Under the pieces are notes generated by a model. That model did no database searches. It was not told the origin of the DNA and was given only the letters and a program-made list of their open reading frames with translations. Of a stretch of 64,000 nt of DNA, positions 1 to 41,671 are shown one piece after another (the first letter of the stretch is position 1; every line of letters begins with the position of its first letter). The DNA comes from Thalia democratica (taxonomy: Eukaryota). The DNA is taken from contig OZ241833.1 in NCBI GenBank assembly GCA_965202585.1, positions 41,912,001-41,976,000 on the forward strand, given 5' to 3'. The position numbers and the translations under genes are program-made.

Positions 1-7
1 TTTACAG

Positions 8-1679: not shown

Positions 1680-1743
1680 CTCATATCAAAAATTAATCCA
1701 AACAGGTTTCATCCAGTATTTTTTATTTGTTTTGTTACAACAG

Positions 1744-5254: not shown

Positions 5255-5655
5255 CAGGGTTGCCACGAAACCTGGAATCCTGGAAAAACCTGGATTTTGA
5301 CAATTTAGGCTAAAAAAACCTGGAATTTGAGAAATTTTGAAAAAAAATTGGAAAATTCATAAGTTTTGATCAAAGATTACAAAAAATATGGGGTTTAAAC
5401 AGTTTTTATAAGTTAAGTAGTAAGGTTTTGATTTGACAAAAAAATCTATCATGTAGACAAAAAATTTTTTTATAATAAAAATAAATTTAAATGATTATTA
5501 CAGTATCTTTTCAATTTTATTATACTTTTCAACACAGTTTTCAACCTTTTAATTAACTTTAAACTAAAAATAGATCCAAAAACGTGTATTTTAAAAAACC
5601 TAGAAGAAATTCAGAAAACATAGAAGAAATTTCTTAATAACCAGTGGTAACCCTG
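5255..5655. mobile_element. MITE, 12-bp TIR CAGGGTT(G/A)CCAC, 6-bp TSD CTTGTA (hAT-like by termini)
   Basis: CTTGTA|CAGGGTTGCCAC ... GTGGTAACCCTG|CTTGTA; internal CCTGGAA repeats. Confidence 0.85.
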
Positions 5656-11400: not shown

Positions 11401-12554
11401 TAAAGTTTACTGAGAAAATTTTTGAGGCGATTATAGCAAAATATTTATTTTATGTGGGTTTTTATTTTTTTAAAGAAAAGTAAACTTTAATCTGTGAGAA
11501 AAATTCCAATGAAAGTTGAACTTTGTAAACTTAGTTTGAAAAATTCAGTCTTTAAAAAAAGTTTATTTATGTTTTGTTCGCTAATATTTACATGATAAAG
11601 TTTTAAATTGAAGCAAAAAAAAAAAAAAACGATTTTCAGGTGGTTAAACTCGTATCCTTAGAGAAAGTCTTGTAATTAATAAAAAAAAAACATTTATCAT
11701 TTATTTTTATTTATTTCATTTATTTTTATCGAAAAAACATCACCTTGAGCAATTTATTTGAATACAGACTGTGGTTGAGTAGGTTATACTGGTTTAATAA
11801 ATTAAAAAACTAAATAGTAATTTATTTTTATTGGTTTAATTTGTTTTAAATAACTTGGTTGAACTCAAAACTGTTATTTTAATTCACAATTTTAACCATA
11901 ATAAATGTTTGAACACGTCAGCAAAATTAATTATTATTTAGACCAGTTGTTGATGTTGTTAAAAAAATGTTTTAGTTAAGTGGTTTTAGTCAACAGAATT
12001 AATTTTAACAGCATCAAAAATATTAATTTATCTATAAAAGCTATTCTAATTAATTTATTACTAACAATTTTTCAATACGCTAACAACAGTTCATGTTACA
12101 CATTTATTACATCACACTGTCAAAATTTGTTGAAATACAACCCAATAAAATTGTCTTGAACCTAAAATGGATGAACTCAGAATATTGTATGACCTCTGCT
12201 TTTAAACTCACATGTTTGTTTTACTTCAGAGCAAGTCTGGTAGTTAACTTGAAAAATAAAACATTTATCACACAGTTTTGTGGCTTTTGTTAAAAAAACA
12301 TTATATTAGGCAATTACAGACCAAGTCTATGTTCGTGGTTTGATACATTGAAAAATTAAACATTTTATTTTAATTCTCTGTTTTTATGTGTAATTATTAC
12401 CTCACACTGTCAAGTTTTGTTTTTATTTTTCTATTTTATCAAACTCAAGCAAATAACTACACTTCAGAATAAGTATGCTCACAAATGGTTCCGTTACACC
12501 TCTAAATAGTACTAGACATATTTTATTACAAATAACTTACTTGTGTTATATATT

Positions 12555-12960
12555 CCATCAGCTCAACAAGTTATTGTGAACTCAAACAAGTTATACGAGC
12601 CATGAACTCAATAAACTCCGTGAACTCTGCTTGGCGATGAACTAAAAAGTTTGGTGAACTCAAACTGGGTAATAAATCATGATTTAACAGCTTGCTAATA
12701 TCTTCTCTTAAACCTAAACCATAAACTCAACAGACTAAATAATGTTTAAAGTATTTTGCTACGACAAAATATTGAAGAAAATTGCGTTTAAATTCTGCAA
12801 TAAGTTAAAAAAAAATTTAACAAAAACATTTTAAAACAAACAAGGAAAAAACTTGTTGTTTTCTCACTTTAAAACACAGCATTAAAAATTCAACAAAGTC
12901 GTGTTGAACCCAGAGGGTGGATGAACTCAAAAGTTCTTGTGAACTCAAACTGCGAAATAA
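12555..12960 (+). repeat. Cluster of TGAACTCAA motifs (probable decayed repeat element)
   Basis: Many GAACTC(A/T) motifs; recurs at ~36985-37390 and ~63850-64000. Confidence 0.5.
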
Positions 12961-15900: not shown

Positions 15901-17032
15901 ATTATCTATGATTGAATTGTTGTTGAGGTTATTTAATTTTTGAGTCAATTATTTGTTCTGATAAGCATTGAATAGGGAGTTAAAGTAGTAATTGAATAGT
16001 TTTAATTTACCATCTTTGTACAGTAATATAGAATGACATTAATTGACAGTTTGAATTAATTTGTATTATGATTACTTAAAACATTGTAGGAAATATTTCA
16101 AACTATTAAGTTATTTTCAGCTCAAAAATATAATGTTTTTAATAAAAAATATTGTAATAACTATGTATATAGTTCATAACCACTAGAATGACGCAGTAAA
16201 AATGTATAAATATTTGCTTTTTTATAAAACACCATATATTAAAAGGTTGTTTTATTACATTTTAGGCAGTAAGTTTACATAAAAAAAAAATCTAAATAAT
16301 ACTTTCCAGTTATTTTGTATGCCTTAAATAGTTCACTATTAGTTGTTTTTCAAGTTCTTCAAAGTATTGTTTAAATCGAAAAGTAAACAAAAATTTTTAG
16401 ATGTTTTTTTATTTAGTTAAAATGAATTAAATATAACTAACTTCAAGTACGTTCAACCTACTTGGCTAGATGCTTACAAAAATTACCTTGGTTTATTTGA
16501 AAAGTATGACCTATGTTATAAATGTTTCATTTTTTATTTATTTGGCGTTTAACACTTTAAATTTAAATAAAAAAAACAATTAATTTAAAGGATTTTATTT
16601 TATTGGTCTGTAAATAGTAAGAACATTGTTAACAAAATTGTAAGACAAATTGTATTACTAAGATTAAATACCAATGACACATAAATTCTTTGTAAGATAA
16701 AATTAGCATACAAAATTGTTTTTCAAATTTTATTAATTAAAATACAGCAGGTACATTTTTGACATTTGTTTTTCTTAAAAATAAATTTTATGAATCATAT
16801 GACAACAAAACTTTGAGAGAAAATTTTGACAATAGTTTTTATTGTCAAAATCTTCCTTATTTAAATAGTTGAACTTTACAGCTTTTAAAATGTTCAAAAT
16901 AATAAGCGTCAAAGCTACTACTACTGCCAAAAAGCTTACTATTGCTTTGCTAGTTTAACTGTTTACATTTAACACAAATAACATTATTAATAACATCGAC
17001 ATGAAAAATCTAGTATTATGACGTCATTACAG

Positions 17033-17172
17033 AGCCACGTGCCGCGGTGGTTGAAGGACACTCGGGTGTACAAGTGGCCGGAAGACTTTGAGGACCTGAT
17101 GTACCGAATCTACAAGGTGGCCAAGTACCGCACTCCCACGTTAGGGAAACCCCCTAAATGCACTATTACCAG
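17033..17172 (+). CDS. TRAF3IP2: C-terminal SEFIR exon, copy 1 (SHVPRWLKDTRVYKWPEDFEDLMYRIYKVAKYRTPTLGKPPKCTIT...)
   Basis: cattacAG acceptor (17031-32), phase 0. Joined to 2296 it gives FIPLLIGDANY-SHVPRW, colinear with recalled ACT1 FIPVLFPNAKK-EHVPTW. The 3' end is uncertain: possible AG|GTACGC donor at 17173, or read-through to the stop at 17302. Confidence 0.85.
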
Positions 17173-19712
17173 GTACGCTTTTGATTGTGTACGGTTTATT
17201 AGTAATTCACTAATATTCTGTTATCAGTTGTTTGATGAAATTACATTTTGTATGTTTTGCAACACTCAGACCAGCTTGGATGTTTTTACAAATTCAGGAT
17301 AGTTTTTGGAATTTTTTTTATTGCTTCTTTTAAGTCCTTTTGTTTTTATTTTGGTGTTTAAGTTTGATTAACAGTACTTTTTCTCTTTTAGTTTATTTTT
17401 TTATTTTAGAAAAATTTCAAATACTTTGGGTAGCTTGATATAACTCAGGTTGTTTTTTGCTCAAAGGGCGGGAACCTTATTGTTGTTGCCTCACAATTAC
17501 TTGCAGTAGGTTTGAAATATATTAAAATAAACAAATAAAAAAGAAAAAAAGAAAAAACAGCCAATTGTATTTTGACAGGTATGTCAATTGAAACAAGAGG
17601 GCTGCAAACTGCAAAAATTGATTTATTTGAAAAACTAAGTGGTCGAAAAGAAAAAATTGCGTAAGTTGTCCAAAAGAATTATTAAACGATCAAAAGTTAG
17701 AAAAATTAATTAAATATTTCAAAAATTTATACAATATGTCTACTCAATCATTCTGAAATGTTTTTGTTGTAGGTGAAAGTATTTTATTATGTGAAAAAAT
17801 ATTATTTTTGTGCAAAAAAAATGTTTATTTTAGTTTTATTGATTAAACCTGTCAATATTACTGAATTTAACATAATTATAAAATTATTATCAAAAAATTT
17901 TTGCTTTTAACACTTTTAGTTATTTTGATTTAGGACAAAAAAATAAGTACAATAGAAAAGTTTTTTATTTTACAGAGAAAATTCTGACAATTAGTTTATT
18001 TGTTTTAGTTAAGTAGAACTTTTTTTTCTTTTATAAAGAAAATAATCTTAAATGATTGTTGCATATAGTCTCGTTTTTAACTTGTTAAATTTTTGCATAT
18101 TTTTACTATTTAAAAGTATGTTTTTAATATTGTTTGTTTTTTAAATAAATGTATTTACTAACACTTTAAACAAGTTTTTATCACCTATTTTTTATGAACT
18201 ACTAAAAGTTGTTTTTTTTTAATTTAAACTTTTTTTTATGCATTATTTAAAAACTTTTCGTATGTTGTTTTTTTATGCAATTTTATAAGTCAGTCTGTAA
18301 TGTTATTACAGACATTTTGAAATTTAAAAAGTTCAAAAACTTATAAAATCATTTCACTTAAAGTTTTTTTTTCATGAAGGTTTTTAAAACACGTAAATGT
18401 TTTGTTAATGTTGTTATATTTTACTCAGATATCTTTATAGTGTATGTTCATTAAATAAATTCGTAAAACTTAATAATCTAGGTTTTAATAATGACTTTGT
18501 GAGAGTTAAATTTTTTTTTTTAATAGTTTTTAAGAATAATCAGATATAGAATTCATACCAGTGTATTTAATTTTTAAGATGTAAACAGCATTTAAGCTTA
18601 AAGTATTTAAGTTTTTCAATAATTTATAAAAGTATTTTTGTATTTATTATTTAAGTTAGTATCAAAAAGTTAATTATAAATACCGATGGTAGCCTGGTTT
18701 GAATTAATTTTTACCAATTCTGATAAGATAGACTTGTTATGTGTATTAAGATCCGTAAACATAAATTAGAAAAGTGCTTAATTACTTTGAAAAGCATTAA
18801 AAATAATTTAGAACATGTTAGTTTGATTTTAGTTAAATAACAAATTACTTACAATTTTGTTAATTTTGAGTGTAAGTGATTCTGAACGTTTCATTTCAAA
18901 CACTCAAAATTTGTTCAGTAATCTTAGTGATAGTGATAAAATTTTAACTTAAGTATTTATTTTTTTTAAACTTTAAGAAAAGTAGTTCTTGTGCAAAAAA
19001 AATATAAGAAATTTATTAAAATTTCAGCCTTTTAATGCGATTTCACTGTTAAAGATTGTGATTATATTAGGCGTTCAAATTAATTTTTATATTAAAACTT
19101 CAATTTTTGTTAGTTTCCCGTCGACTTAGTTTTGGAGTAAGTATAGGTTATTTTACAAAAAGAAGTATTAATAAATAAAACCAAAAAAAAAAAAACAGTA
19201 AAGGTAATTTGTAGTTTTATATGTGATGGTCTGAACGTTTTAAGTTAAAATAAATTCTTTTGTATTGCTAGAATTTTTAAATTTATATTATTTGATAAAA
19301 CTAAATATTCGTTATTATAATATAAATTTAATTGAACAACTCATAGAAATTATAACTAAAACTTTCAATTCAACATTTTGCCAGTATCTACAGCGAATAT
19401 ATTTATATTTTACTCTGTTTCTAAACTTTAAACAGTTTAAGTTTAAAAGAATGAGTTTTGAAGCATAATTTATTGTGTCACAGGTCTTTAAAAGTTTTTT
19501 GATATATTTAGTTTTTCATTAATTTTGTAGGTTATTATACGTTTATGTGTGTGTGATTGTTTGTGATATTATAGTTTGCATAGTTATTAAGTATAATTTG
19601 ATGTAGGTAAAAAATGTGATAAAAGTTAAAAGAATTTGGAAGGGTATATTACGTAGGTATATGTTTTTGGTGAAAAAAATAATTTCGCTCAGTATGAGCC
19701 AAGGCTAAATTT

Positions 19713-19738
19713 GGGGGGCTAGTGGGTGGGGGATAGGG
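19713..19738 (+). other. G-quadruplex-forming motif
   Basis: GGGGGG-CTAGT-GGG-T-GGGGG-ATA-GGG; unit 2 copy at 43994-44019. Confidence 0.6.
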
Positions 19739-19846
19739 ACGGCATGGTGTCAGCGACAGCGAGTGGTGAAAAAACAAGTAAATTTTTTAAATTTTATTTT
19801 TTAAAGAACGAAAATGGTGCAACCTCAGGAGAAGTCTGCGACTCCG

Positions 19847-19862
19847 TGGCGCCACCTAGCGG
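19847..19862 (-). promoter_or_regulatory. CTCF-like site
   Basis: Minus strand CCGCTAGGTGGCGCCA matches the CTCF core CC(A/G)C(C/T)AG(G/A)TGGCGC; unit 2 copy at 44128-44143. Confidence 0.45.
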
Positions 19863-20719
19863 TTAAAATTTTAAAATTATAATTTTATGCGACCAAATGT
19901 TTATTTACTTCAAGTTAGAACTTTTAAAACCTCAAATTTTAGTATATTTCCTTTAAATAAACCTTTTTAAACACGCTTAATCTAATATACTGCAAAAAAT
20001 AAATGTGAAGTCTCAACAATTATTTCTTTACGTGAAATTTTCTTTTAAAATTTAGATACAAAATAACTTAGACATAAAACGTGACCAAAATGCAAATAAA
20101 TTCTACATTAGAAATTCTATTTCTTTTACTTAGAGCTTTGAAAACTTCGACTTCTAGTAGGTTATTTTAATTTCAGTTAAAAATAAATGGTTTTTATTAT
20201 TAGAAATAAAGCAAAAAACTTCGTTGTAGTTTTTAAAGACACTTTAAAAGTTTTTCTAGATTCAAACGCATTAAACAGTAGCCTTACAAGGAATACATTT
20301 TCTTTTTGCATATGGTATATTTTATGTTGTTTTTATATGCTTAAATGAAGTTATAAATAAATAATGCTTCCAAACTTAAGAACAGTAAACTAATCAGCAG
20401 CACTTGCTGAGTAGTGGGTATTCTTAAAGTAAAGGAAAATTTGTAACAAGTTGATTATAAATTATATAAAACTCTAAAGTTAAAACAACATATTAAACAC
20501 AGCTAAATTAATTCCAAACAATAACAGTTTCTTTTAGTTTCATACAAAGCTTACTTATGAAAGAAAGGTTTAATATATTAAGTATTTAAATGGCATAAGG
20601 TTATTTTGAAGAATTAATGAATTAAAATTGTTATTTTTACTATAAAGTTTAAGTTTTTATTTAAGTTATATATATATATATTTAAGTTTATAAATCCAAA
20701 ATCAGCAACGATGACAAGA

Positions 20720-20798
20720 ACTTAATTGGCTATGTCGGTAGAGCGTTAGACTGGAAACCCAGACGTCGTGGGTTCAAATCTTAGTAGTGCAATTTTTT
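20720..20798 (+). pseudogene. tRNA-like unit resembling tRNA-Lys (pseudogene or SINE head)
   Basis: TGGCTATGTCGGTAGAGC (A box), GTCGTGGGTTCAAATC (B box), T6 downstream; acceptor and anticodon stems pair poorly. Copy at 44985-45063. Confidence 0.65.
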
Positions 20799-21087
20799 AT
20801 TTCACGCTGATTTTTTTAACAATAACTATTAAGGGTTGTCACATAATACATATTATCAAACATATAACTTTTGTTTATTTAAAATACAAAAGTACCATTT
20901 TATTAAAGAAGCAAACCTACTAAGATTGACATTTGAACATCGTCGTTGTCTTTTGTTAACAATAAAATATTTTGAAGTTTTGCTAAGCATGTTAGCTTTA
21001 GGTAGATACTTTATTACTTAGTAAACAAGAAAAATTGATATGAAATTAGGCACAAAAGTCAAACATTATAATATATGTATTCAATAT

Positions 21088-21163
21088 AAGTGCAGTTCAG
21101 TGTTAATGACTGTTATAATCAGTCTTATAGTATTAGGTTCGAGTCCAATGTCAGGCGCATTTT
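21088..21163 (+). pseudogene. Degenerate tRNA-like unit, parent unclear
   Basis: Perfect B box GGTTCGAGTCC, 5-bp stem/7-nt loop GACTG-TTATAAT-CAGTC, weak A box, T4 after. Copy at 45371-45446. Confidence 0.45.
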
Positions 21164-21638
21164 GTTAACTTTATTCATTCTTAAATTTAGTTTCGTTTTA
21201 AAACTCGATATACAAAACAAGTTGAACGTACTCAACAAAAATTCACATAAATTTTACTTACTTTTATTTTATTTTTTTTGGAACTTTAAAAACCTCCGAA
21301 TGTTGTACATAACTATTAAACAAAGTTATTTCCAAACTTAAAAAGTGCTTATCAGTAATCTAATGAGTAGTGGCTTGCTGAGTAATGAATAAAAACTATG
21401 AGTAAAAACTTTTTAAGTAAATGAGACTTTAAAACAAGCTTTTTTCTTCGAGTATGAAACAACTAAAAGAATATTTTAAGTTTGAAATATTAAACACATC
21501 TAAATTAGTTTTAAACAGTTACAATCCCTTTAGTTTCATAATAATAAAATATGCCTTAAATGTTAGTATGATGTATGTCGTTGATTCATATAAAAAACTG
21601 AAAGTAATTGACAAATTTGGTTTTTAGATACACCCGGA

Positions 21639-22471
21639 TTAATTTACTACTGTGTCTATGACTCTTTTTAAAGTCTTCTTTTTAAGTCTATGATGAAAAG
21701 AAATTATAACTAAAAATTTTTGTTTTATATTCGGAGTTTTATAATAATAACCTGTAATATTTTATGTGTGTACTTTAAAGTCTAAACAAGCATAAACTTA
21801 CTTGTTTATTATAACTTACCTTTAATAACGTACTTTTATTAATAATAGCATGTATGAGTGAAAATATATATGCAAAAATAAAGCCACATGCAAGTGGTGC
21901 AATAGCAGAGTGCTTGAAGCAGTCGGCCTGCGACCCAGACATCCTAGGTTCAAAACCGCGTGTGACCCGTTTTCTTCAATTTTTTTTAAATTAATTAAAT
22001 TAGTTTTAAAAAATCTACTTATATTTTGAAACAATATATATACATTTACACCTGTTTAATTTACTACTGTGTCTATGACCCTTTTTAAAGTCTTCTTTTT
22101 AAGTCTAAGATGAAAAGAAATTATAACTAAAAATTTGTGTTTTTGTTTTATATTCGGAGTTTTATAATAACCTGTAATATTTTATGTGTGTACTTTAAAA
22201 TCTAAACAAGCATAAACTTACTTCTTTATTATATTTTACCTTCAAATAACATATTTTTATTAATAATAGCATGTATAAGTGAAAATATATATGCAAAAAT
22301 AAAGCCACATGCAAGTGGTGCAATAGCAGAGTGCTTGAAGCAGTCGGCCTGCGACCCAGACATCCTAGGTTCAAAACCGCGTGTGACCCGTTTTCTTCAA
22401 TTTTTTTTAAATTAATTAAGTTAGTTTTAAAAAATCTACTTATATTTTGAAACAATTTATATACATTTACA
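21639..22471 (+). repeat. 421-bp tandem repeat, 2 copies, each with a tRNA-Arg-like unit (21883-21987, 22304-22408)
   Basis: AGTGGTGCAATAG (A box), GTCGGC-CTGCGAC-CCAGA, GGTTCAAAACC (B box), T4/T8 tracts; GCCACAT pairs imperfectly with GTGTGAC. Confidence 0.85.
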
Positions 22472-25221
22472 GTCTTATATTTAATACCCAAAAAGCTGGT
22501 ATTAATGTTGTTCAATGAACTTAATAAAACCCAGTTAAAACTTGATTGGTTTAAATAAAACTTGTCACTTTACTTCAACATAATATTGCATTGATAGCTT
22601 AGTAAGCTTAATTTATTACAAAAGTTATCATTAATCCTTATTTTTGATTTTTTTTAGGATTTTATACTGTAAGAGATTATAAAATAACTAGACTCTAAAT
22701 TTTTTGTGGGGCATAGTGAGTTTTGTAAAAGTAAAACATATTTTTTGCTGAGGATAAATTAAATTCCTAATAAGATTTTCTTTATTTGTACTGATAAAGT
22801 TTTAAGATTAATGCTTGAAAGGCTGAATGACATATATTTAATAAATTAGTCTTTTTACTTGTAGCCTTTAATAAAACACACATTAGACCCAATAACTTTG
22901 GTTCACTGAGTATTGAAATTTATTTCAATCTTTAAATGCATCAAAAAGAAACTAATTGTACAAACTTCTTAGATATTATGAATAAGACAAAGTTGTATTA
23001 AGCTATTAATCCCTCAACCATGGCATTATATAAGGAATATGTAAATAAAATTTCAATAAATCTGTATGTTAAAAGTGACAATTTATTTTCAACATTGTAT
23101 TTTTTTGTTTAAAGAGTTTACAGATAAGTTTGACTTATGTGTCAAAATTGAAAAATAGTAGTAATTTGAATTTTAACATGATTTTTGTACAGTTCAAGGT
23201 TACAGTTGGTTTCAAACAGGTAAAATTATAATTTTAAAACTAAACATATAATTAAGAAAGTTAGAATTATTGTGGGCGCTGAAAATTAATTTGTTAATCA
23301 ACAAATGTTTAGTTATTTAGTACGAGCTAAAATGTTTTTCAATAAAATGTTTCTCAATATTACTGAATTTAGCTTGTAAACAATAGAAGGGAAACCACCT
23401 AAAATTAAGAACTTTTACAATCAAGGACTAAATCTTGTTGATATAAAAAGAACTCAACAAAATAATCTAAATAAAAGTGTAAAGTTTTTGTTTAATATCA
23501 ATCTGAAATAAAAATTATAAAAAATATTAATATATATAATATACCTACAAAATAATGAAAAACTCAGCTGTAGTAGAAAACAATGCAATACGTTTCAAAA
23601 AGTAAACTTGTTTTTAAAACGACTTACATTTGATATATTGTGTTAGATGGATTAAAACATTGTTATATAAAGTCTTAAGACTCAATTTATCCCGTTTATA
23701 GCCCAGTTTTGTCATTTTGGTCCCGATTTGTGGCTAAGTTAGCTTTTTATTCAAAGTAGCGCCATTTAAAATTTAACTTCTTTAAATCTAGCTGTACTTT
23801 TACCACTTACTTCATATAATTTATTAATACTAGATATTCAATAGTTTAGTTATATGAAACCAGAAAATTCACACAACGATGAAAATACACAAAATATGGC
23901 AATTATGCTTAAAACTTAAAAAACATTTTACTTAAATATCAAAAACATTAAAAGATTGTCAGGAAATAACTTGTGCATTACATTATAACACTCGTTTCGT
24001 TAAAATGCATCATATAAGTTTAAAAGTTAAAAATTAATTTCGAATTTTTACGAACTAAAATACTTATATATTGTTTTTACAAACATTTTTTCAAATCAAA
24101 TTTAAGATTCACGAAACATTGCTTAGTAAACACTTTTACTTTTAGTCTTGTATTAAAAAGCTGGTCAAGTTTTTTTTTGTTTTATTTTACTTAATGTTAA
24201 CGATAGTATTTAAAAACTTTCAGGAGCTGTTAAAACTAGTTTAATAAAAAATATATTTGTCTAATATAGGTAAATATTTATACAACTTTCATCTACTAAA
24301 CTCGATTTTATTGTGAATTAGTTGTTTCTATATCTTAACAGCTACTTTCTTAAAAAGATGTATTAGAAATTTATCATTGAATGTATTTGTTAACAGTTTC
24401 TATGCGTGTATTGTGCAAACCACGTTGTAATAGTCTAAAATGTAAAAGAAAGTTTTATGTGTTATAGATTTATTTATCAGCTTTTTTACCAGCTAATAGT
24501 TTTCGTTTGTTTAGTCTACTACATTTATTGGATAGATATCTTAAAAGTTTCGTTTTGCCCTTTATCTAAATTAGAAAATATGTATAATATGTTTACAATT
24601 TACTTTTTTATAAGCAATGGTTGCACTAAAACACTTAAAACTACTTTTTTTTTTATTTACGACCCAGCTATAAAATAAAATGCATAAAAAAATATATATT
24701 AATGCTTATTGTTTACAACCAACTCACAAAAGATAGAGATTTTGTACAATAGTTAAGCAAGTATACACTTTCCAACTACTAAGCATTATCTGAGTATAAT
24801 TAAGTTATTATTTTTTCTAAACAGTATTCTTAACAGTTTTTTAATTGTTTTTTGAAAACAAATCAAGATGTATTTTGAAAATAAGTAAAACCTTTTTGTT
24901 CAAAGTAAAATTTTTCATTTCCATAAACTGTGCAATCTATGAATGAAATAAAAATATGTAAAGCAAGTTCATTAAGTAAGTAGTATTTATCATCTACTAA
25001 ACTAAATACACTAACTAAAGTTGTAATAAAGCTACTTAAAAAGCCTCTGTGTATGAGAAAATTTGCAAACAGGGTTTTAAACAGATAACTACTATCAAAT
25101 AAACTAAGTTTAGGTACATTTGCATATGTGCAACCTAACTAAATGTTGTAAATAAAATAAAAAGATTGTTAACTGAACGAAATTTTGAGTTAATATACTC
25201 AAAAAAATGCATTTACTGCAA

Positions 25222-25301
25222 GGTAGTATAGTCGAGCGGTTGTTGAAAAGCGATCGGGATCCAGTGACCCGAGATCGAGTCAGCTGCACTCCAACTTTTT
25301 T
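25222..25301 (+). pseudogene. tRNA-like unit resembling the 5' end of tRNA-Leu, left palindrome arm
   Basis: GGTAGTATAGTCGAGCGGT versus recalled tRNA-Leu GGTAGCGTGGCCGAGCGGT; weak B box GAGATCGAGTC; T6 downstream. Copy at 51584-51663. Confidence 0.5.
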
Positions 25302-26708
25302 GTAAAATAATTTTACGTTTTATAACTTACTTTTAACAAAACCATTTATACAGTAAAGCTTTGAATCTAAATAAAGTTAATAAACATAGCTGAACAAACC
25401 ATAACATAGCTTTTACCAATAATCAATGTAATATAATTTCAAAAGACTTTGATTAGTTAAAAACAATTTTCATTTTTCACATACTATATTAAATATGTAT
25501 TAAGTTTTTATGTTTAATGTTCATATAAAAAAAATAATTTAGCACTTTAACTTATTATTAGTAACTATATTAACTTATTTGTCTTGAATGAACAACCAAA
25601 GCAAAATCAAACGTTATATTTTAAAAGTGTAAAATATTGTACAGCAGCTTTGTATTGTTACGTCACTATAAACTAATTTATTATAAGAGCGTTTCTGAAA
25701 ACTTCAATTTAGTATCAAAAAATTTTTGAGCAGTTAGTACACTTGTGTTTTGGAAATCATCAATCACAACTTTAGACAATGTATTGAATTCCAAAAAATG
25801 TTATAAAAGTATATTTTCATTTAATTTATAGTTAAGCATAAGCAAACTTTGTTTTATAACAAGTTGTCTTAAATGTTTATAACTACATTTAACTAAGGTT
25901 TGTAATGAAGTTTGTAAAAATAACAAATATTCAAGCAAACTCCCTTTGTAATATAATTTAAACTTTTTGTAGTTTTCTGATACTTAATTGTGGAGTGAGA
26001 CATATTTTGTTTAACTGGAACTTTTTATTTATAATGGTTAGCCTTTTTTTTAACTTATCTTAAATAAATACAAATTCAAATTACTGGTTTAAACAAAGTT
26101 ATTGAAACTTCATTACAAACCTTAGTTAAATGAAGTTATAAACATTTAAGACAACTTGTTATAAAACAAAATTTTCTAATGCTTAACTAAATAAAAAAAC
26201 ACTCCAATAACATTTTTGGAATTCAGTTCATTGTATAAAGTTGTAATTGATATAATTTTTAAAATACAAGTGTACTAACTGCTCAAAAATTTTTTGATAC
26301 TAAATTGAAGTTTTCAGAAACGCTCTTAAAATAAGTTACTTTATAGTGACGTAACAATACAAAGCTGCTGTACAATATTTTACACTTTTGAAAGAAAAAG
26401 TTTGATTTTGCTTTGGTTTTTCATTCAAGACAAATAAATTAATATAATTACTAATAATAAGTTAAAGTGCTAAATTATTTTATAAGAACATTAAATATAA
26501 AAACTTAGTACATATTTAATATAGTATGGGGAAAATGACAATTATTTTTAACTAACAAAAGTCTTTTGAAATTATATTACATTGATTATTGTTAAAAGTT
26601 TTTTAAAGTAGTATTTTCAGCTATGTTTATCAACTTTCTTTAGATTCAAAGCTTTACTGTATAAGACATTTTGTTAAAAGTAAGTTTTAAAACGTAAAAT
26701 TATTTTAC

Positions 26709-26788
26709 AAAAGAGTAGGAGTGCAGCTGACTCGATCTCGGGTCGCTGGATCCCGATCACTTTACAACAACCGTTCGACTATACTACC
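26709..26788 (-). pseudogene. Mirror copy of the tRNA-Leu-like unit, right palindrome arm
   Basis: Reverse complement of 25222-25301 with a few substitutions. Copy at 53082-53161. Confidence 0.5.
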
Positions 26789-29700
26789 TTGCGCTCAAAA
26801 GCATATTTTTGAGTATATCAAGTCAAAATTTCTTTTAGTAAACAATCTTTTTATTTTATTTACAATATTTAGTTAGGTTGCATATATGCAAATGTACCTA
26901 AACTTAGTTTATTTGATAGTATTTATCTGTTTAAAACCCTGTTTGCAAATTTTCTGATACTCAGAAGCTTTTTAAGTAGCTTTATTACAACTTTAGTTAG
27001 TGTACTTAGTTTAGTAGATGATAAGTACTATTTACTAATGATCTTGGTTTACATTTTTTATTATTTTATTACATATTTTTATTTTATTCATAGATTTCAC
27101 AGTTTATGGAAATGAAATTTTTTTATTTTAGCAAAAAAGTTTTAATTTTTTTCAAAACAAGCTTGTAATACATCTTGATTTGTTTTCAAAAAACAATTTA
27201 AAAACTTTTAAGATATACTGTTTAGAAAAAATAATAACTTAATTGTAATAAGATAATGCTTAGTAGTTGGAATGTGTATACTTGCTTAACTATTGTACAA
27301 AATCTTTATTTTTTTCGTGATTTGTTTGTAAACAATAAGCATTAATATATATTTTTTTTATGCATTTTATTTTATAGCTGGGAGGTTAATAAAAAAAAGA
27401 AGTTTTATAAAAATGTAAATTGTAAAGTATACAATGTAAACATATTATAGATATTTTCTAATTTAGATATAGGGCAAAACGAAGCTTTTAAAATATCTAT
27501 CCAATAAATGTAGTAGACTAAACAAACGAATACTATTAGCTGGTAAAAAAGCTGATAAATAAATCTATAATACATAAAACTTTCTTTTACATTTTAGACT
27601 ATTACAACGTGGTTTGCACAATACACGCATAGAAATTGTTCACAAATACATTCAATGATAAATTTCTAATAAATCTTCTTAAGAAAGTAGCTGTTAAGAT
27701 ATAGAAACAACTAAATCAAAATAAAATCAGGTTTAGTAGATAAAAGTTGTATAAATATTTATCTATATTAGACAAATATATTTTTTATTAAACTATTTTT
27801 AACAGCTCCTGAAAGTTTTTCAATATTATCCTTAGCATTAAGTAAAATAAAACCAAAAAAATACTTGACCAGCGTTTTAATACAAGACTAAAAGTAAAAG
27901 TGTTTACCAAGCAATGTTTCGAGAATCTTAAATTAGTTTGATTTGAAAAAATGTTTGTAAAAACAATATATAAGTATTTAAACTAATAACGTCTTCAGAG
28001 TTTTTGAGTTATTTTATGCAATATTTCGTTTTAAGTTTTAGTTCGTTTTAGTAAAAAGTGTTAACTAAGCAATGTTAACTGTTTCGAGGATCTTAAAATA
28101 GTTTAATTCGAAAAAATGTTTGTAAAAACAATATATAAGTATTTTAGTTCGTTAAAGATTCGAAATTAATTTTTAACTTTTAATTTTATATGACTTCTAA
28201 TAAATTTAAAGTAAGCTTAATGCATTTTAACGAAACGAGTGTTATAATGTAATGCACAAGTTATTTCCTGACAATCTTTTAATTTTTTTGATATTTAAGT
28301 AAAATGTTTTTTAAGTTTTAAGCATAATTGCCATATTTTGTGTACTTTCATCGTTGTGAGAATTTTCTGGTTTCATATAACTAAACTATTGAATATCTAG
28401 TATTAATAAATTATATGAAGTAAGTGGTAAAAGTACAGCTAGATTTGAAGAAGTTAAATTTTAAATGGCGCTACTTTGAAAAAAAAGCTAACTTATCCAC
28501 AAATCGGGACCAAAATTACAAAACTGGGTTATAAATATGATAAATTGAGTCTTAAGACTTTATATAACAATGTTTTAATCCATCTAACTCAATATATCAA
28601 ATGTAAGTCGTTTTAGAAACAAGTTTACTTTTTAAAACGTATTGCATTATTTTCTACTACAGCTACTACAGTATATTATATATATTATTATTTTTATTTA
28701 TTTTTATTTAAGATTGATATTAAACAAAAACTTTACACTTTAATTTAAATTTTTTCTTGAGTTCTTTTTATTTCAACAAGATTTAGTCCTTGATTGTAAA
28801 ATTTCTTAATTTTAGGTGGTTTCCCTTTTATTGTTTGCAAGCTAAATTCAGTAAAATTGAGAAACATTTTAGCTTGTACTAAATAACTTAATATTTGTTG
28901 ATTAAAAATGTAATTTTCAATGTACACAATAAATCTAACTTTCTTAAATACATGTTTAGTTTTAAAATTATAACTTAATCTGTTTTACACCAACTGTAAC
29001 CTTGTATTGTACAAAAATCATGTTAAAATGCAAATTACTACTTTTTTTCAAATTTGACAAATAACAAGTCACACTTATCTGTAAACTCTTTAAACAAAAA
29101 AAAATACAATGTTGAAAATAAGTTGTCACTTTTAACAAACAGATTTATTGAAATTTTATTTACATATTCCTTATATAATGCCATGGTTGAGGGATTAGTA
29201 GCTTAATACAACTTTGTCTTATTCATAATTATTTAAGATGTTTGTACAATTAGTTTCTTTTTAATGCATTTAAAGATTGAAATAAATTTCAATACTCAGT
29301 GAACCAAAGTTATTGGATTTAATGTGTGTTTTATTGAAGGCTACAAGTAAAAAGACTAATTCCTTAAATATCTGTCTCATCCTACAGCCTTTCAAGCATT
29401 AATCTTAAAACTTTATCAGTACAAACAAAGAAAATCTACCTAAATTTTAAATTATCCTCAGCAAAAAACTATGTTTTACTTTTCTAAAACTGACTAAACC
29501 CTACAAATAATTTATTTAAAGTCTATATATTTTATAATGTTATACACTTCCTAAAATAATCAAAAATATGGATTAATGAAGACTTATGTAATAAATTAAG
29601 CTTACTAAGCTATCAATGCAATATTATATTCAAGTAAAGTGACAAGTTTTATTTAAAATCATTTAGTTTTAACTTGTTTTTTTTTAAACTCATTGAACAA

Positions 29701-30233
29701 CATTAATACCAGCTTTTTGGGTATTAAATATGAGACTGTAACATTATATATCTTGTTTCAAAATATAAGTAGATGTATATTTTATTTAAAATTACTATAG
29801 TTTTACTATGCATTTAAAAAGTTATTTAATACATTTTTGGTCCTTTTTCTCATATCATGTACACTATTTTATATAACTAGATTTTTATATACATATAGAC
29901 TATTAAAACAACTAAAGTTTATCACAAAAAGTAAAAATATCTACCATCATAAAACTTATAAAACTTCTTCATTTATAGATATGTGTTTACATATTTCAAT
30001 GATTTTTACATAGTTTTAATGCATACTTAATTAAGCTTGTTATAATGTTAGTTTATTGGATTTTGTGGAAATTTTTCATGAATGTTTTAACTCATTTTTA
30101 GCGTGTGTGTTTTGAAAGACATTTAATGAGGTGTTATGTTATAAACAACACAAAATGTTTGAAAATCATTGGTGAGCCGATGAACCTTGTTAAACACAAA
30201 AGTGTTGAATTGCAACGTTAAATATTACTTGTA

Positions 30234-30652
30234 CAGAGTTGCCACGAAACCTGGAATCCTGGAAAAGCCTGGAATTTGACAATTTAGGCTAAAAAAACCT
30301 GGAATTTGAGAAATTTTGAAAAAAAAATTGGAAAAATCAGAAGTTTTGATCAAAGATCACAAAAAAATATAGGGTTTAAACAGTTTTTGTAAGTTAAGTA
30401 GTAAGGTTTTGATTTGACACAAAAATCTATCATGTGGACAAAAAATTTTTGTCAACATCAAAAGTTTTTTATAATAAAATACATTTAAATAATTTTACAG
30501 TATCTTTTCAATTTTATTATACTTTTTAACACAGTTTTCAACCTTTTACTTAACTTTAAACTAAAAATAGATTCAAAAACGTGTATTTTAAAAAACCTAG
30601 AAGAAATTCAGAAAACTTGGAAAAAATTTCTTAATAACCAGTGGTAACCCTG
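30234..30652. mobile_element. Same MITE, unit 2 copy
   Basis: Same TSD; left TIR mutated to CAGAGTTGCCAC. Confidence 0.8.
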
Positions 30653-33600
30653 CTTGTAGCTTAGTTTAAACTTAAAAAAATGTAATTTATTAACTGTATT
30701 TAAATGTGTGTTCAATTTAGATAGACCATAATACGCAACAACATATTGAAAATCATAACAGTTTAAAAAAATGTTTTTAGCTATGAGCAAAATTTGCTTC
30801 AAGTTCTCTCTGGTGCTAGTTTACATGCAACCTAATGTGATATTTAAACTAATTTCGTTCGAGATACGTATCATGCATGGGAAAAATGTATACTATCGTT
30901 AACAGAAAGTTTAAATTAATATGTCATCAACTTGAAACATTAAAGTTCGAACTTGCTCGGAACTTTTTTTCACGGTCAGAGTTGCCTGAAGGTTGCAGAT
31001 TTCAACAAACCATTTAAACTGCAATCAATCAGCCACGATCAAACAAAATGCGACTGACCGTAAAGTCAACGTTTTACATACTAGTTTCTAGCTGGTGGTT
31101 TTCTTGTGAAATATTTCGAAATAGTTCAGCGGTGTTTTTGTTCGGTCGGGATTGAAACGTTACTGGTATGAATATTTTGATCAATCCAAAACCGACTAAG
31201 CGTGATTTGTGTCTTTTTTGTTTGCGTTTTCAATTGAAAAAGCGGTTAAAAACTAGTTCTGCATACAGGGATTTGTAAGTAAGCCGGGCGTTTTTAAAAC
31301 TAATTCTTAAATTAGTTGAACAAATTTTTTTTTATATTCGATCAAAAAGATTTTGATATTAAAAAAAAAATATTGTGGTAAATAAAACGTTTTGTGAATT
31401 ATAGTTTTTACGCGTAGAAGGTAATTTGCTTCCAATTAAAAAAGTTAAAAATTCTTACAGAAACATTTACACTGATATTGCAGTTTTAAAACAGGGCGGA
31501 TTAGAAAGTTAATTTTTTAAATAAATTTGTAAAGAACTATAAATTGAACATGATGTTACTTTGCTTTCAAATTAGAAGAATATGTTTTAATTTACGTAAT
31601 ATTCAAAAAATATAGATCAGTATTTCTGTATATTAACACAAGTGTTGCAATAATCGTATGCATTTTAAATCAGAATGGTTTAAAAAGTTACTGATTTAAG
31701 TGCAACTTTTTAAAATTTTATTAAACAAACGTGATCACACTTTGTATACAAATGGAAATTTGAGGCGTAATTTAACATTAATTTTTTAATTAGATTAAAT
31801 TCAAATGCATGTTGCCACAAATTCTAATACATTCAAATTCAAATCACAACGGATTAAAAAGCATTACTATTGTAAGTGTAACTTTTCAAAAACTAAAAGT
31901 TTAATATAAAATGATAAACTTTGCATACAAATGATAGTTTTGAGGCGTAATATACCATTAATTTTTAGATTTTTTTTAATTCAAATACATATTTTGTCAG
32001 AACGTATTAAAATGCAACTTTTCAAATACTATAGACTAAACGTGATATACTTTGCGTTCAAATGGAAAACGTATTGACCACAAGTTTTGCGAATTTAAAA
32101 TTCAAAAAAATGCTTTAAAGACTAAAAAGTATTACCATTGTAAGTGAAACTTTTAGAAAAAATGTGCTAAACCTAGTTATGCTTTTATTTTAAAAAGTTA
32201 GCACTAAGTTATTACAAAAACTTCTTCTTAATATTTTATATGTATTATGTTTGAACAGATTAAAAAGTTTTACTATTGTAAAATGCAAGTTTTCAAAAAA
32301 CTACAAACTAAACATGATACACTCAGCATTCAAATGAAAAAACGCATCAACCATTAATTTTCAAAATTTCGAAGCGAACATGCAACTAGTGTAAGTGCAA
32401 TATTAGAAAATTTAACTAGAACGTGATAACACTTTGCATTCAAATGAAAAACGTACTAAGCATAAATTTTAAAATGAACGTGACATCCACCAAGCGCATT
32501 TTGCGCTCAACCAGCGAGAATGTGATTTGCATACTAGTTTTACATATAGCTTCGGGGCATAAATTGAATAAAGTGAAAAGTATTGATGAGTATCAACACG
32601 AATTGTTGAAAGGTCTGCCGGGTTTATTGGCTGGTTGAAACAAATTGTTTGAATATTTGCTGTAAAATGTTTAAAATTAGTTTAAATATATAAATAAACG
32701 TTGCAATGTTAGGAATAATGTCAAGTATTTTTATAAATTAAGTTGATACATTTTAAAAGTTTTGCTGATTTTGTTAAACTTTTGAAAAATGACATTTGTA
32801 TAAATTGAGTTAATTTATAAACTGTTAGATTTTGGTGGTTCTGTAAAAATAAATAAAGTAATGTTGTAATAAATTGCTGACATTATAACAAATTAAAATA
32901 ATATCTGGAAAAAAAAACAAAATAGTTTTAAAAAGTCTCAACGATTTTTAGACAATTGGTAAAAGCTTTGTTGTAACTATTGATTGATTGAAATATTTAA
33001 GTTTTGCCTAATACAAACAAAATGAGAATTGTTGAATAATACTGTGGTGTGTTCAAATAACAATGTTTATTATTGCTCTATTTTGGGAAATATTCTAATT
33101 AATTATCTCGCTTAGACTATGTCTAAAGTAATTTTAGTATAATGTTATAAGCCATCATATTTTTTTGTTATTTGTTCGTTTGAAAACAAATTGTACAAAA
33201 ATATTGTTTCCTAAGTGTAAACTTGAACAATTTTTTACTTCACACGTTTAAAATTTAGTATATTTTAAAAATAACTTATTAATTATTTGATTTATTTTCT
33301 AAATATATAATAATTTTAAAAAAATATTTTCTGCGTGAGTTTGTCTTGTATGTTTAACATTGATTTCTATAAAGCTTCATAGAATGGAATTATAAAATAT
33401 TTTGAGAGTTCTAAAAAAAGCAATTAGTTTTGAACAACAAAATTGTCACCAAAAACATTTCAAACTTTTTTTTTTGGTTTGTTAATGCAAAATAAAAGAA
33501 GCAACTACTATGGTTGCTTATGGTTGTGGCTATTGCTGTTTATCATTTTAATCTAAATGTCATTTTTAGTGTTGTTTTTTTAGGAAACATTTGTGCGATT

Positions 33601-36600
33601 AAAAGTTGTGCACTGTATACATTGTTTTTTAACTATTTAACTAAAAACACAGCTATATTTGTTTTTTAGTCTAAATATTTACTGATTACTTGTTAAAAGA
33701 ACTACAAGCAAAAATCCAAGAGTTTACTTCACCCTTTGTTAATTTAGAGGTATGACTCATATTTATTGTTAAATTTTTTGTAAACCTTTAACCTACTTTT
33801 TTTTTTTGCAAAACATTTTAATTTCTCTGAAAACATGAAAACAGTTGTTATTGACAAATTTCGAAGCTAAACACTTCCTATATGAATATACTTGAATTAA
33901 ATTCAAATAAGTAGCTTAAAAAGTGGTAAGGAAAATTCAATTTCTCAACGGATTTTTTTTAATTGAAAAATTAAAAATATTGAAATATCCATTAATAACT
34001 TTAAAGTAATTTAATTTAACAACTTTTTTACGTCCAATAAATAGTTTAATAAATTTTAAACTACTTATCATCACCGGGTTTTTACCGAAAACAAATATTA
34101 TTTGTCTTGTTGAGTTTTTGACGCATTTACAATATTAAAAGTTTTCTAGCAAATTAGTTTTTTGTAAAGTTTCCAAAACACTTTTAATAAAGATTTATTT
34201 TCTGAGCAAAGCAAAGGTTTAGTTTGAAACAAAGGTTAAAAGTTACTCTTGATTAGTTGTTTAACTTGTAAAATGTAACAGACAAACAGACAAACAAATG
34301 TAAAAAATTCTAAGTGAGTGAAACAGTCTTATTTTCGTTTCAAATTGGATTAAAAGGTCAAGTTTCAAATGGTTGAAAAATATTTGTGTTTAATCTTGAT
34401 TGATATGTAGAAATAATACTGAGAAAATTTAATTTTTTCTTCAATGTTAAATAAGTTACATAAAGAATTAGCTTTGAATTTAGTTTGTTTTAAAAGTTTA
34501 AAATTTTCGCAGATGTACTCCTAAAAATCATTGGTTTTGGTAGTTTGTATTTATAACGTAGCAAGTTTTATTTTATAGTTATGTTTTCAAAAATTCAGCA
34601 AACTGTTTTAGCGTTAATTGTTAGCAACGTTTTTTCTGCAAATAGAACTTTTTCGACCGTTTGTGTGGACATGAATTATTAAATTCAATCAGAATCCAAA
34701 AAATTAATAATACACGAGTTAGATTTGCATATAAGTTGAAAATAAACTGCTTTTTATTTTGATAACAATCAGTTTGCATTTAATTTTCCTTTCAACGTTC
34801 AAGGTGTAATCACCTGACTTCGCAATAAATTTTGTCAATTAAAAGATTTCTTATAAGCTATGTTGGTTTGTTTGTAGTTTTTGTAGATTATTAACATTTG
34901 TTTATCAATTATATGTAATTAAAAAGAAACATTAAATACATTATAAAACTGACTAATTTAATTTACTTATTTTTTAAACCCAGATAAAGTTAAATGTTAG
35001 TAAACTTATTAACGTTATTACAAATTAAGTGTTTTTATTAATTTGTATTTTAAGCGTTTATTTAAAAAATATCAATAAATAGTAAATAAATATATATATT
35101 TTTTGTAAACAGGTATGTGGCCGTAAATATATATTAAGCAAAACTGATTTTTAATTAATAAAAAAAAAAAACTATACTTTTTATATTATTGTTCTATATA
35201 CTGTATTTCAAAGATATACCTTTAAAATACAGGCATATTTTAATCAATTAAAATGAAGAAGTTAAGTATAAGTTTTTGGTAAACTGTTTTAAAATTTGGT
35301 TAGATGTTTCAAAGATTATAGAAAATCATTATTATCTTACAAACCATTTTTATAATTTGAATATTATTTTAAAAAATTATTCTAATAAAAACACGACCTT
35401 GTAATAGGCACCTAGTTACATAAAAAACCAAATTGGCAAGCTATATGTAAATTAGATACTTGACTGTGCTCTGATTACAATCTCTACAATTTCCAATTAT
35501 TGTTGAGTTCGTGGGAACTCTTAAGTTTACTGAGAAAATTTTTAAGGCGATTATAGCAAATTATTTATTTTATGTGGGTTTTTATTTTTTTAAAGAAAAG
35601 TAAACTTTAATCTGTGAGAAAAATTCCAATGAAAGTTGAACTTTGTAAACTTAGTTTGAAAATTCAGTCTTTAAAAAAGGTTTATTTATGTTCACTAATA
35701 TTTACATGATAAAGTTTTATATTGAAGCAAAAAAAAAAAACAATTTTCATGTGGTTAAACTCGTATCCTTAGAGAAAGTCTTGTAATTTATAAAAAAACG
35801 TTTATTATTTATTTTTATTTAATTCATTTATTTTTATCGAAAAAACATCACCTTGAGCAATTTATTTGAATACAGACTGTGATTGAGTAGGTTATACTGG
35901 TTTAATAAATTAAAAAAACTAAATTGTAATTTATTTTTATTTGTTTAAGTTGTTTTAAATAACTTGGTTGAACTCAAAACTGTTATTTTAATTCACAATT
36001 TTAACCATGATAAATGTTTGAACACGTCAGCAAAATTAATTAATATTTAGATCAGTTGATGATGTTGTTAAAAAAATGTTTTAGTTAAGTGGTTTTAGTC
36101 AACAGATTTAATTTTAGCAGCATCAAAAATATTAATTTATCTATAAAAGCTATTCTGTTTGACTTATTACTAACAATTTTTCAATACGCTAACTACATTT
36201 CATTTTTATCACATATTTATCACATCACACTGTCAAAATTTGTTTTAAATAGTCAAACTCAAACAAATTGTTAAGCATCGGAATAGGCACGAGAGGTTCT
36301 TATCACACCTACACATAACCTTTGAAGTTTTATTTCAACCAAGTAATACATAAGAGTTGCAATTATTTTGCTATTAGTTCAAAAAGTAATATCGAACTCA
36401 ACAAACTAAACAAATTTTAAACTGTTTTGTTATAACGAGATATTTTGTAGTGGCTTGCTCTATTATTCTGTAGTTAGTCGAAAAAGTTTCCGTCAGCTCA
36501 AAAAGTTGGTTGAAACAAACAAGAATTTTTTTTTATTACTTCAAAGCACCCAGCTTTTGAATTGAAACATACAAATCGAAACCCAATAAAATAGTCTAAA

Positions 36601-41521: not shown

Positions 41522-41671
41522 AGCCACGTGCCGCGGTGGTTGAAGGACACTCGGGTGTACAAGTGGCCGGAAGACTTCGAGGACCTGATGTACCGAATCT
41601 ACAAGGTGGCCAAGTACCGCACTCCCACGTTGGGGAAACCCCCTAAATGCACTATCACCAGGTACGCTTGA
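41522..41671 (+). CDS. TRAF3IP2: C-terminal SEFIR exon, copy 2 (same peptide, ending ...CTITRYA*)
   Basis: cacaacAG acceptor (41520-21); three differences from copy 1 over 140 nt, all synonymous; TGA at 41669-41671. Confidence 0.8.
   Translation, partial: SHVPRWLKDTRVYKWPEDFEDLMYRIYKVAKYRTPTLGKPPKCTITRYA

What the first reader, a model, noticed from the sequence alone, without database searches (positions are those of the whole stretch)
22434..29774. 7.3-kb palindrome between the alternative terminal exons
The ~3.5-kb arms are visibly diverged from each other yet colinear, with a ~190-bp spacer, no ORF and no clear TSD. Any transcript reaching exon copy 2 must traverse it and could fold into kilobases of dsRNA, a substrate for ADAR, endo-siRNA production or dsRNA sensing, inside an immune-signalling locus. 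It could also be a foldback-type element.
Basis: partly seen in the sequence, partly recalled or inferred. Interest (0 to 1): 0.7.

Follow-up and report, generated by a model that had tools for sequence, protein, structure and literature searches.

The report
Old palindrome repeated in tandem array
The 7.3-kb mirror-image repeat is real, but it is an old, non-coding inverted duplication carried in every unit of a 25-kb tandem array, an ordinary kind of rearrangement in this repeat-rich marine animal genome, and nothing yet shows that it makes double-stranded RNA.

Summary
Observation confirmed. Arms 22434-25913 and 26105-29774 lie around a 191-nt spacer. They are colinear, differ at 7.5% of aligned sites, have no ORF over 91 aa, no Pfam domain and no target-site duplication.

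It is not a single object. A second copy lies at 48822-56162, 0.6% diverged, because the window is the left edge of a 25-26 kb tandem array. Each unit holds part of a 14.7-kb intron, the last exon of a SEFIR adaptor gene, downstream DNA, a 421-bp satellite and the palindrome. Contig depths in two public runs suggest about 5 and about 20 units. The arm has the same depth as its flank, so it is not a dispersed foldback family.

The four arms group as ((LA,LB),(RA,RB)), so the inversion predates the latest unit copying. Diverged arms rule out an assembly artefact.

Best reading: an old local inverted duplication amplified as a passenger. Both its ends are rearrangement sites: the satellite overlaps the left end and the array junction lies 196 bp from the right end.

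A transcript reaching exon copy 2 must cross it and would fold into a long hairpin, but no usable RNA data were available, so the dsRNA idea is untested. Earlier notes of this scan report several other large palindromes elsewhere in this genome.

The parts
22434..25913 (.). Left arm of palindrome, unit A (3480 nt)
25914..26104 (.). Spacer, unit A: 191 nt, no internal symmetry, identical to the spacer of unit B
26105..29774 (.). Right arm of palindrome, unit A (3670 nt). It holds a local duplication of about 165 nt near 27937-28220 that the left arm lacks
48822..52275 (.). Left arm of palindrome, unit B, 0.87% substitutions from the left arm of unit A
52276..52466 (.). Spacer, unit B
52467..56162 (.). 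Right arm of palindrome, unit B, 0.41% substitutions from the right arm of unit A
21629..22471 (+). 421-bp satellite, 2 units in array unit A. Each satellite unit ends with the outer 38 nt of the inverted repeat, so the array was built across the left border of the palindrome
45912..48859 (+). The same 421-bp satellite, 7 units in array unit B
4992..29970 (+). Tandem array unit A (24,979 nt). It starts inside the 14.7-kb last intron of the SEFIR gene and ends 196 nt after the palindrome
29971..56358 (+). Tandem array unit B (26,388 nt). Unit C starts at 56359 and runs off the window
17033..17302 (+). Terminal SEFIR exon, copy 1. Two extra T at 17179-17180 remove the canonical stop and lengthen the ORF by 40 codons
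41522..41671 (+). Terminal SEFIR exon, copy 2. It ends where the orthologues end, with TGA at 41669-41671

Best explanation
The palindrome is an old local inverted duplication of about 3.5 kb of non-coding DNA, joined head to head across a 191-nt spacer, about 5 kb downstream of the last exon of a SEFIR adaptor gene. It was probably made by a replication template switch or fold-back repair event; this origin is inferred. It was later copied as a passenger whenever the 25-26 kb unit that contains it was duplicated or homogenised by unequal exchange, so every unit of the array now carries one. The two copies in the window are shown; the remaining units are inferred from depth. It encodes nothing and is not mobile. 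Its likely effect is structural. When young, with identical arms, it would have been a break-prone site. That would fit the 421-bp satellite built across its left border, the array junction 196 nt from its right border, and the very low divergence between units over it. This structural role is inferred. If RNA polymerase reads through from exon copy 1 towards copy 2, the RNA would fold into a long imperfect hairpin. The fold is predicted; the transcription is not shown.
For: - **Arm ages.** Left and right arms differ at 7.3-7.7% of sites, while the A and B copies differ at 0.4-0.9%. There are 230 sites fixed between left and right arms and no site with an A|B or crossed pattern.
- **Second copy.** A full second copy exists, and the unit junctions A|B and B|C are identical.
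- **Nothing shared.** The arms share nothing with the rest of the window except the 38-nt terminus that recurs in each satellite unit.
- **No mobile-element features.** There is no target-site duplication, no extension of the repeat, no sub-repeats and no protein domain.
- **Depth.** In run X1 the arm contig (2445 nt from 22427, depth 1942) has the same depth as the flank contigs (1880-2250).
- **Number of units.** In the terminal exon, the B-like letters have depth 2051 against 131-251 for the window's unit-A letters in X1. In X2 the figures are 291-328 against 76. The array therefore has more units than the window shows.
- **Divergence between units.** It is lowest (0-1.4%) over 19992-30970, which contains the palindrome, and reaches 14% elsewhere.
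- **Context.** Earlier unchecked notes list other large palindromes in this genome.
Against: - Other genomic copies were tested only through contig depth over the outer 567 nt of one arm. A whole-genome search was not possible.
- Contig word depth is a poor measure of copy number, as the tool itself warns.
- The link between the palindrome ends and the two neighbouring rearrangements is post hoc, at roughly 3% by chance for the array junction.
- Absence of function is not shown, because no RNA data could be examined.
- The mid-arm stretch 23593-24769 is only 3.6-4.6% diverged, against 13% at the outer end. This could reflect constraint rather than old arm-to-arm conversion.
Confidence: 0.62

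Rival explanations
1. It is a hairpin-RNA locus. Read-through or dedicated transcription across the palindrome yields kilobases of imperfect dsRNA, which is diced into endo-siRNAs or edited by ADAR. Tandem amplification multiplies the dose, as in Drosophila hpRNA loci.
For: The central 1.4 kb folds into one long hairpin of -713 kcal/mol. The palindrome lies on the path between exon copy 1 and the more canonical exon copy 2. It is tandemly repeated. The mid-arm stretch is less diverged than the ends.
Against: There is no evidence of transcription. Runs X14 and X16, of unknown type but probably RNA, hold none of the sampled words of 20400-26400 and nothing real on 17001-23000. Two marine metagenome and metatranscriptome scans with arm 24-mers found nothing. 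The arms resemble no gene in the window that could be a target. With 7.5% mismatches and many indels, perfect duplex stretches are short.
Confidence: 0.08
2. It is a foldback-type or long-terminal-inverted-repeat DNA transposon without its own transposase, or two copies of one element inserted head to head. It was later amplified with the array.
For: It has very long inverted arms, sharp outer borders and a non-coding body. A satellite touches one end. An earlier unchecked note (s1-274445) describes a Foldback-like Mutator element with satellite-expanded arms elsewhere in this genome.
Against: There is no target-site duplication at offsets 0-3. The arms have no tandem sub-repeats and no transposase remnant. 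Arm depth equals flank depth in X1, so no extra copies at 80% likeness or more are seen for the outer 567 nt. The satellite contains only 38 nt of the arm and lies on one side only.
Confidence: 0.12
3. The palindrome is the engine of the array. As a break-prone site it triggered the first tandem duplication and the satellite, and it still seeds exchange between units, which keeps units nearly identical around it and changes the number of units. This is compatible with the best explanation but gives the palindrome a causal role.
For: The array junction lies 196 nt from the right end. The satellite is built across the left end and varies from 2 to 7 units. Divergence between units is 0-1.4% from 19992 to 30970 and up to 14% elsewhere. 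Depth suggests about 5 units in X2 and about 20 in X1.
Against: All of this is correlation from one locus. Other low-divergence patches exist away from the palindrome, for example 13992-15991. The present arms are 7.5% diverged with a 191-nt spacer, which greatly weakens hairpin or cruciform formation.
Confidence: 0.15
4. It is an assembly artefact, a false fold-back join.
Against: Artefactual fold-backs have identical arms, whereas these differ at 7.5% of sites and by many indels. The structure occurs twice with its own small differences. Three runs of two organism labels and several marine metagenomes hold 49-85% of the sampled words of 20400-26400, which includes the spacer.
Confidence: 0.02

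Closest known systems
Other large inverted duplications noted in this same genome (earlier notes s1-311186 18.7 kb, s1-291884 28 kb, s1-311350 38 kb, s1-311139 62 kb)
   Same: Mirror-image duplication with a short unique spacer in an AT-rich, repeat-rich, probably salp genome. Earlier follow-ups judged them an ordinary kind of rearrangement (unchecked notes).
   Different: This one is smaller, gene-free and much older, with 7.5% arm divergence. It is itself embedded in, and multiplied by, a tandem array.
Ampliconic palindromes of primate sex chromosomes (own knowledge)
   Same: Two long inverted arms around a unique spacer. There are signs of past arm-to-arm sequence exchange, since the mid-arm is less diverged.
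   Different: Those arms are 9 kb to 1.45 Mb, over 99.9% identical through continuing gene conversion, and carry testis genes. Here the arms are 3.5 kb, 7.5% diverged and gene-free, and no conversion has occurred since the last unit copying.
Drosophila hairpin-RNA (hpRNA) endo-siRNA loci such as hp-CG4068 (own knowledge)
   Same: A long inverted repeat that would fold into a hairpin RNA. It is tandemly repeated and non-coding.
   Different: hpRNA arms derive from and target a protein-coding gene, and their transcripts and 21-nt siRNAs are documented. Here no target, transcript or small RNA is known.
Foldback (FB) and Galileo-type transposons with very long inverted ends (own knowledge)
   Same: Kilobase-scale inverted arms and little or no coding content between them.
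   Different: FB arms are built of tandem sub-repeats, the elements have target-site duplications, and they occur at many loci. None of these three features is seen here.
Intronic inverted Alu pairs as ADAR substrates in human pre-mRNA (own knowledge)
   Same: Inverted repeats in a transcribed non-coding stretch of a gene would form dsRNA in the pre-mRNA.
   Different: Alu pairs are about 300 nt, come from a dispersed family, and their editing is measured. Here the repeat is a single local 3.5-kb duplication of unknown transcription.

Membership tests
Foldback-type / long-TIR DNA transposon | Long terminal inverted repeats with sharp ends | tested here: met
   The arms are 3480 and 3670 nt, and the repeat stops sharply at 22434 and 29774.
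Foldback-type / long-TIR DNA transposon | Target-site duplication flanking the element | tested here: not met
   No direct repeat of 2 nt or more was found at offsets 0-3 from either border. A short duplication could have decayed at 7.5% divergence.
Foldback-type / long-TIR DNA transposon | Multiple copies at unrelated loci | tested here: inconclusive
   Arm depth equals flank depth in X1 for the outer 567 nt. There are no other copies in the window.
Foldback-type / long-TIR DNA transposon | Arms made of tandem sub-repeats (classical FB), or a transposase or its remnant | tested here: not met
   The arm holds no direct repeat family, and 13 arm ORFs have no credible Pfam domain.
hpRNA / endo-siRNA hairpin locus | Inverted repeat able to fold into a long RNA hairpin | tested here: met
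   The central 1421 nt fold into one hairpin of -713 kcal/mol.
hpRNA / endo-siRNA hairpin locus | Transcription across both arms, with 21-23 nt small RNAs | not testable with these tools
   Only assembled contigs were served. X14 and X16 are of unknown type and hold nothing, not even the exon control.
hpRNA / endo-siRNA hairpin locus | Arms homologous to a target gene | tested here: inconclusive
   The arms show no similarity to any other part of the window and no protein domain. The rest of the genome was not searchable.
Gene-conversion-maintained ampliconic palindrome | Arms kept over 99% identical by continuing arm-to-arm conversion | tested here: not met
   Arm divergence is 7.5%, and no site shows an A|B pattern since the A/B split.
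Local inverted duplication (structural variant) | Two colinear inverted copies of local DNA, a short spacer, and copy number tied to the flanks | tested here: met

The most novel reading that the evidence does not exclude
The palindrome is a working hairpin-RNA module of an immune gene. Transcription that runs past the frameshifted exon copy 1 towards the canonical exon copy 2, and further units, produces one long dsRNA hairpin per unit. This would couple use of the IL-17-pathway adaptor's alternative ends to dsRNA, siRNA or ADAR signalling. Tandem amplification, about 5 to about 20 units between samples, would set the dose.
Probability: 0.06. Interest if true: 0.75.

Novelty: new member of a known kind. 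Interest (0 to 1): 0.3.

Why it matters
On the best reading this is one more large inverted duplication in a genome that has many. The points worth keeping are structural. A decayed palindrome sits at the end of each unit of a variable-copy array that multiplies only the last exon of an immune adaptor gene. Both palindrome borders coincide with later rearrangements, a satellite and the array junction. That makes the locus a usable natural case for asking whether palindromes seed tandem amplification. It also means that any RNA study of the SEFIR gene's alternative ends must allow for kilobase hairpins in the precursor RNA.

Tried and rejected
- **tRNA and RNA families.** ARAGORN at default settings and Rfam at gathering score, E up to 1 and E up to 10 found no tRNA or other RNA family in or near the arms; the E up to 10 list was noise. 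ARAGORN at an 80% threshold gave 57 calls, mostly AT-rich noise. Only the tRNA-Ser-like unit of the satellite recurs consistently.
- **Protein domains.** A Pfam scan of 13 arm ORFs gave nothing credible.
- **Metagenome scans.** Two exact-pattern scans of JGI metagenome contigs, one with the arm-terminus 24-mer and one with the GC-rich island 24-mer, each found 0 loci.
- **Earlier findings by sequence.** Searches with the arm end and the satellite unit returned nothing, which means nothing according to the operators.
- **Read laying.** I chose 17001-23000 so that the terminal exon would serve as an expression control. The candidate RNA runs X14 and X16 matched only 40-nt pieces with 5-9 mismatches, so the control failed and nothing can be said about transcription.
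- **Literature.** One search found no report on palindromes in salps. A salp genome paper states only that over 80% of the genome is repeats (PMC10686999).
- **Assembly artefact.** Rejected because the arms are diverged.
- **Inverted gene pair.** Rejected because the arms hold no exon-like ORF or domain.

Full report
**1. The observation**

An inverted-repeat search of 20000-32000 returns 25 colinear arm pairs that tile 22434-25913 against 29774-26105. A self-comparison of the window gives the same two blocks. A global alignment of the left arm (3480 nt) with the reverse complement of the right arm (3670 nt) has 3170 matches, 238 mismatches and 334 gap columns, which is 93% identity at aligned sites. 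The largest indels are 101, 59 and 27 nt and lie close together, where the right arm holds a small local duplication. The spacer is 191 nt (25914-26104) and has no internal symmetry. The longest stop-free stretch inside the palindrome is 91 codons. Thirteen arm ORFs have no credible Pfam match. The repeat does not continue beyond 22434 or 29774, and no direct repeat of 2 nt or more flanks it at offsets 0-3.

**2.

The same palindrome occurs again at 48822-56162. The window is the left edge of a tandem array:
- unit A is 4992-29970;
- unit B is 29971-56358;
- unit C starts at 56359 and runs off the window;
- bases 1-4991 are unique.

The A|B and B|C junctions are the same sequence.

A 421-bp satellite abuts the left border of each palindrome, with 2 units in A (21629-22471) and 7 in B (45912-48859). 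Each satellite unit ends with the outer 38 nt of the inverted repeat. That terminus is the only part of the palindrome found anywhere else in the window. The satellite was therefore built by repeated duplication of a 421-nt segment that straddles the left border. On the other side, the array junction lies 196 nt beyond the right border.

**3. The gene context**

A search with the ORF at 1596-1958 found a 354-aa SEFIR-domain protein, P0001, 83% identical over that exon. It is encoded without introns on a 1.2-kb contig, L001, from JGI sample 3300018950, which looks like a transcript. Mapped on the window it gives exons at about 1737-1934, 2096-2296 and a last exon starting at 17033. That last exon recurs at 41522.

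The last intron is 14.7 kb, and the left breakpoint of the array (4992) lies inside it. Each unit therefore carries part of that intron, the last exon, about 5 kb of downstream DNA, the satellite and the palindrome.

Exon copy 2 ends exactly where P0001, P0004 and P0006 end, with TGA at 41669-41671. Copy 1 has two extra T at 17179-17180 that remove this stop and add 40 codons.

**4. Relative ages**

In a four-way alignment of the arms, left versus right differ at 7.3-7.7% of sites. LA differs from LB at 0.87% and RA from RB at 0.41%. There are 230 sites fixed between left and right arms, and no site groups the two arms of one unit against the other unit. The spacers are identical. The inversion therefore predates the last copying of this segment between units, and the arms have not exchanged sequence since.

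Arm divergence is uneven (chi-square p = 3e-4):
- 13% in the outer 290 nt;
- 3.6-4.6% in 23593-24769;
- 7-10% towards the centre.

I read this as an old arm-to-arm conversion tract, although constraint is not excluded.

Divergence between units is a mosaic of 0-14%. It is lowest (0-1.4%) from 19992 through the palindrome to 30970. The oldest layers between units are as old as the arms. The palindrome may therefore be about as old as the array and has been spread or refreshed by unequal exchange.

**5. Independent data**

All listed public runs are kept as assembled contigs. Three runs under two organism labels hold 76-85% of the sampled words of 20400-26400, a stretch that includes the left arm, the spacer and the first 296 nt of the right arm (26105-26400). 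Several marine metagenomes hold 5-49%.

Laid on 17001-23000:
- the locus contigs of X1 have word depths of 1880-2250, including a 2445-nt contig that starts at 22427 and runs into the arm (depth 1942);
- those of X2 have depths of 280-365.

The arm is thus no more abundant than its flank, which argues against a dispersed repeat family, at least for the outer 567 nt.

Within the terminal exon, the abundant contigs carry mostly unit-B letters. In X1 their depth is 2051 against 131-251 for the window's unit-A letters. In X2 it is 291-328 against 76. The 197-nt insertion specific to unit A (17309-17505) has depth 5.5 in X1 and 75.6 in X2.

Contigs from elsewhere that touch the stretch only by chance have depths of about 65-130 in both runs. 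Taking that as a rough single-copy level, X2 would have about 5 units and X1 about 20. This is an inference from a measure that the tool itself calls poor for copy number. The within-locus ratios do not depend on that baseline, and they also show more units than the window holds.

**6. Artefact?**

A false fold-back join would have identical arms. These arms differ at 7.5% of sites and by many indels, and the structure is present twice with private differences. This is the one gap in the argument.

**7. Transposon?**

The arms have no tandem sub-repeats, no target-site duplication, no coding remnant and no excess depth. Only one end has a satellite, and it contains just 38 nt of the arm. An earlier unchecked note describes a Foldback-like Mutator element with satellite-expanded arms elsewhere in this genome. 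The present structure shares none of its defining parts. I give this reading 0.12, because the whole genome could not be searched.

**8. dsRNA source?**

The central 1421 nt fold into one near-continuous hairpin of -713 kcal/mol, so the potential is real. Evidence of transcription is missing. X14 and X16 are of unrecorded type. They are probably RNA, because X14 is from the same sample as X1 yet lacks a locus that X1 holds at great depth. They hold none of the sampled words of 20400-26400. On 17001-23000 they match only 40-nt pieces with 5-9 mismatches, and they have nothing on the terminal exon. Without a positive control this says little. Two scans of marine metagenome and metatranscriptome contigs with arm 24-mers found nothing. 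AATAAA hexamers are as frequent in the known 14.7-kb intron (2.7 per kb) as downstream of exon copy 1 (3.5 per kb), so they do not decide whether read-through occurs.

**9. Best explanation**

This is an old local inverted duplication of non-coding DNA, amplified as a passenger of the array (confidence 0.62). Earlier notes of this scan, unchecked by me, list other large palindromes of 18.7, 28, 38 and 62 kb in the same genome, which they take to be a salp. Salp genomes are reported to be over 80% repeats (PMC10686999). The kind of event is therefore common here.

Two later rearrangements coincide with the two palindrome borders, and divergence between units is low over the palindrome. This suggests, but does not show, that the palindrome was or is a break and exchange hot spot (0.15 as a causal claim).

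**10. Novelty and score**

This is a new member of a known kind. Nothing found here would surprise a specialist, and the one exciting reading, a hairpin-RNA module tied to an immune adaptor's alternative ends, remains untested and unlikely (0.06). Interest 0.3.

Noticed in passing
window 21629-22471 and 45912-48859: A 421-bp satellite has 2 units in array unit A and 7 in unit B. Each satellite unit contains an 87-nt tRNA-Ser-like stretch followed by an oligo-T run. ARAGORN calls it only at a lax threshold and Rfam gives no match. Each unit ends with the outer 38 nt of the palindrome arm.
   Followed up: partly
window 17309-17505: A SINE-like insertion of about 197 nt is present only in unit A; unit B has the empty site at 41796. 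It has roughly single-copy depth in run X2 (75.6) and is almost absent in X1 (5.5), so it is probably polymorphic or specific to one unit.
   Followed up: partly
window 17179-17180 versus 41666-41671: Terminal exon copy 1 has two extra T that remove the canonical stop and add 40 codons. Copy 2 keeps the stop at the position seen in the orthologues P0001, P0004 and P0006. The abundant exon variant in runs X1 and X2 carries mostly copy-2-like letters.
   Followed up: partly
window 1760, 17019, 41508: TGACGTCA occurs three times, against 0.21 expected. One occurrence is inside a SEFIR exon. The other two lie 6-13 nt upstream of the 3' splice site of each terminal-exon copy, in the intron, although earlier notes say this word is confined to exons.
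   Followed up: no
window 4389-4766: A 24-bp minisatellite of about 16 units lies about 225 nt upstream of the left breakpoint of the tandem array (4992).
   Followed up: no
window 25215-25290 and 26720-26795 (again at 51628-51651 and 53094-53117): A GC-richer island of about 80 nt ending in an oligo-T run is mirrored in both arms. No covariance model or default ARAGORN supports that.
   Followed up: partly
window 17001-23000 (runs X1, X2): The locus contigs are about 2000 deep in X1 and about 330 deep in X2, while chance contigs from elsewhere are about 65-130 in both. This suggests a large difference in array unit number between the two sampled sources, about 20 against about 5.
   Followed up: partly
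window 4992-64000: Divergence between units is a mosaic of 0-14% with sharp transitions, for example 13992-15991 at 1-2% next to 12992-13991 at 14%. This is typical of repeated unequal exchange or conversion among more units than the window shows.
   Followed up: partly
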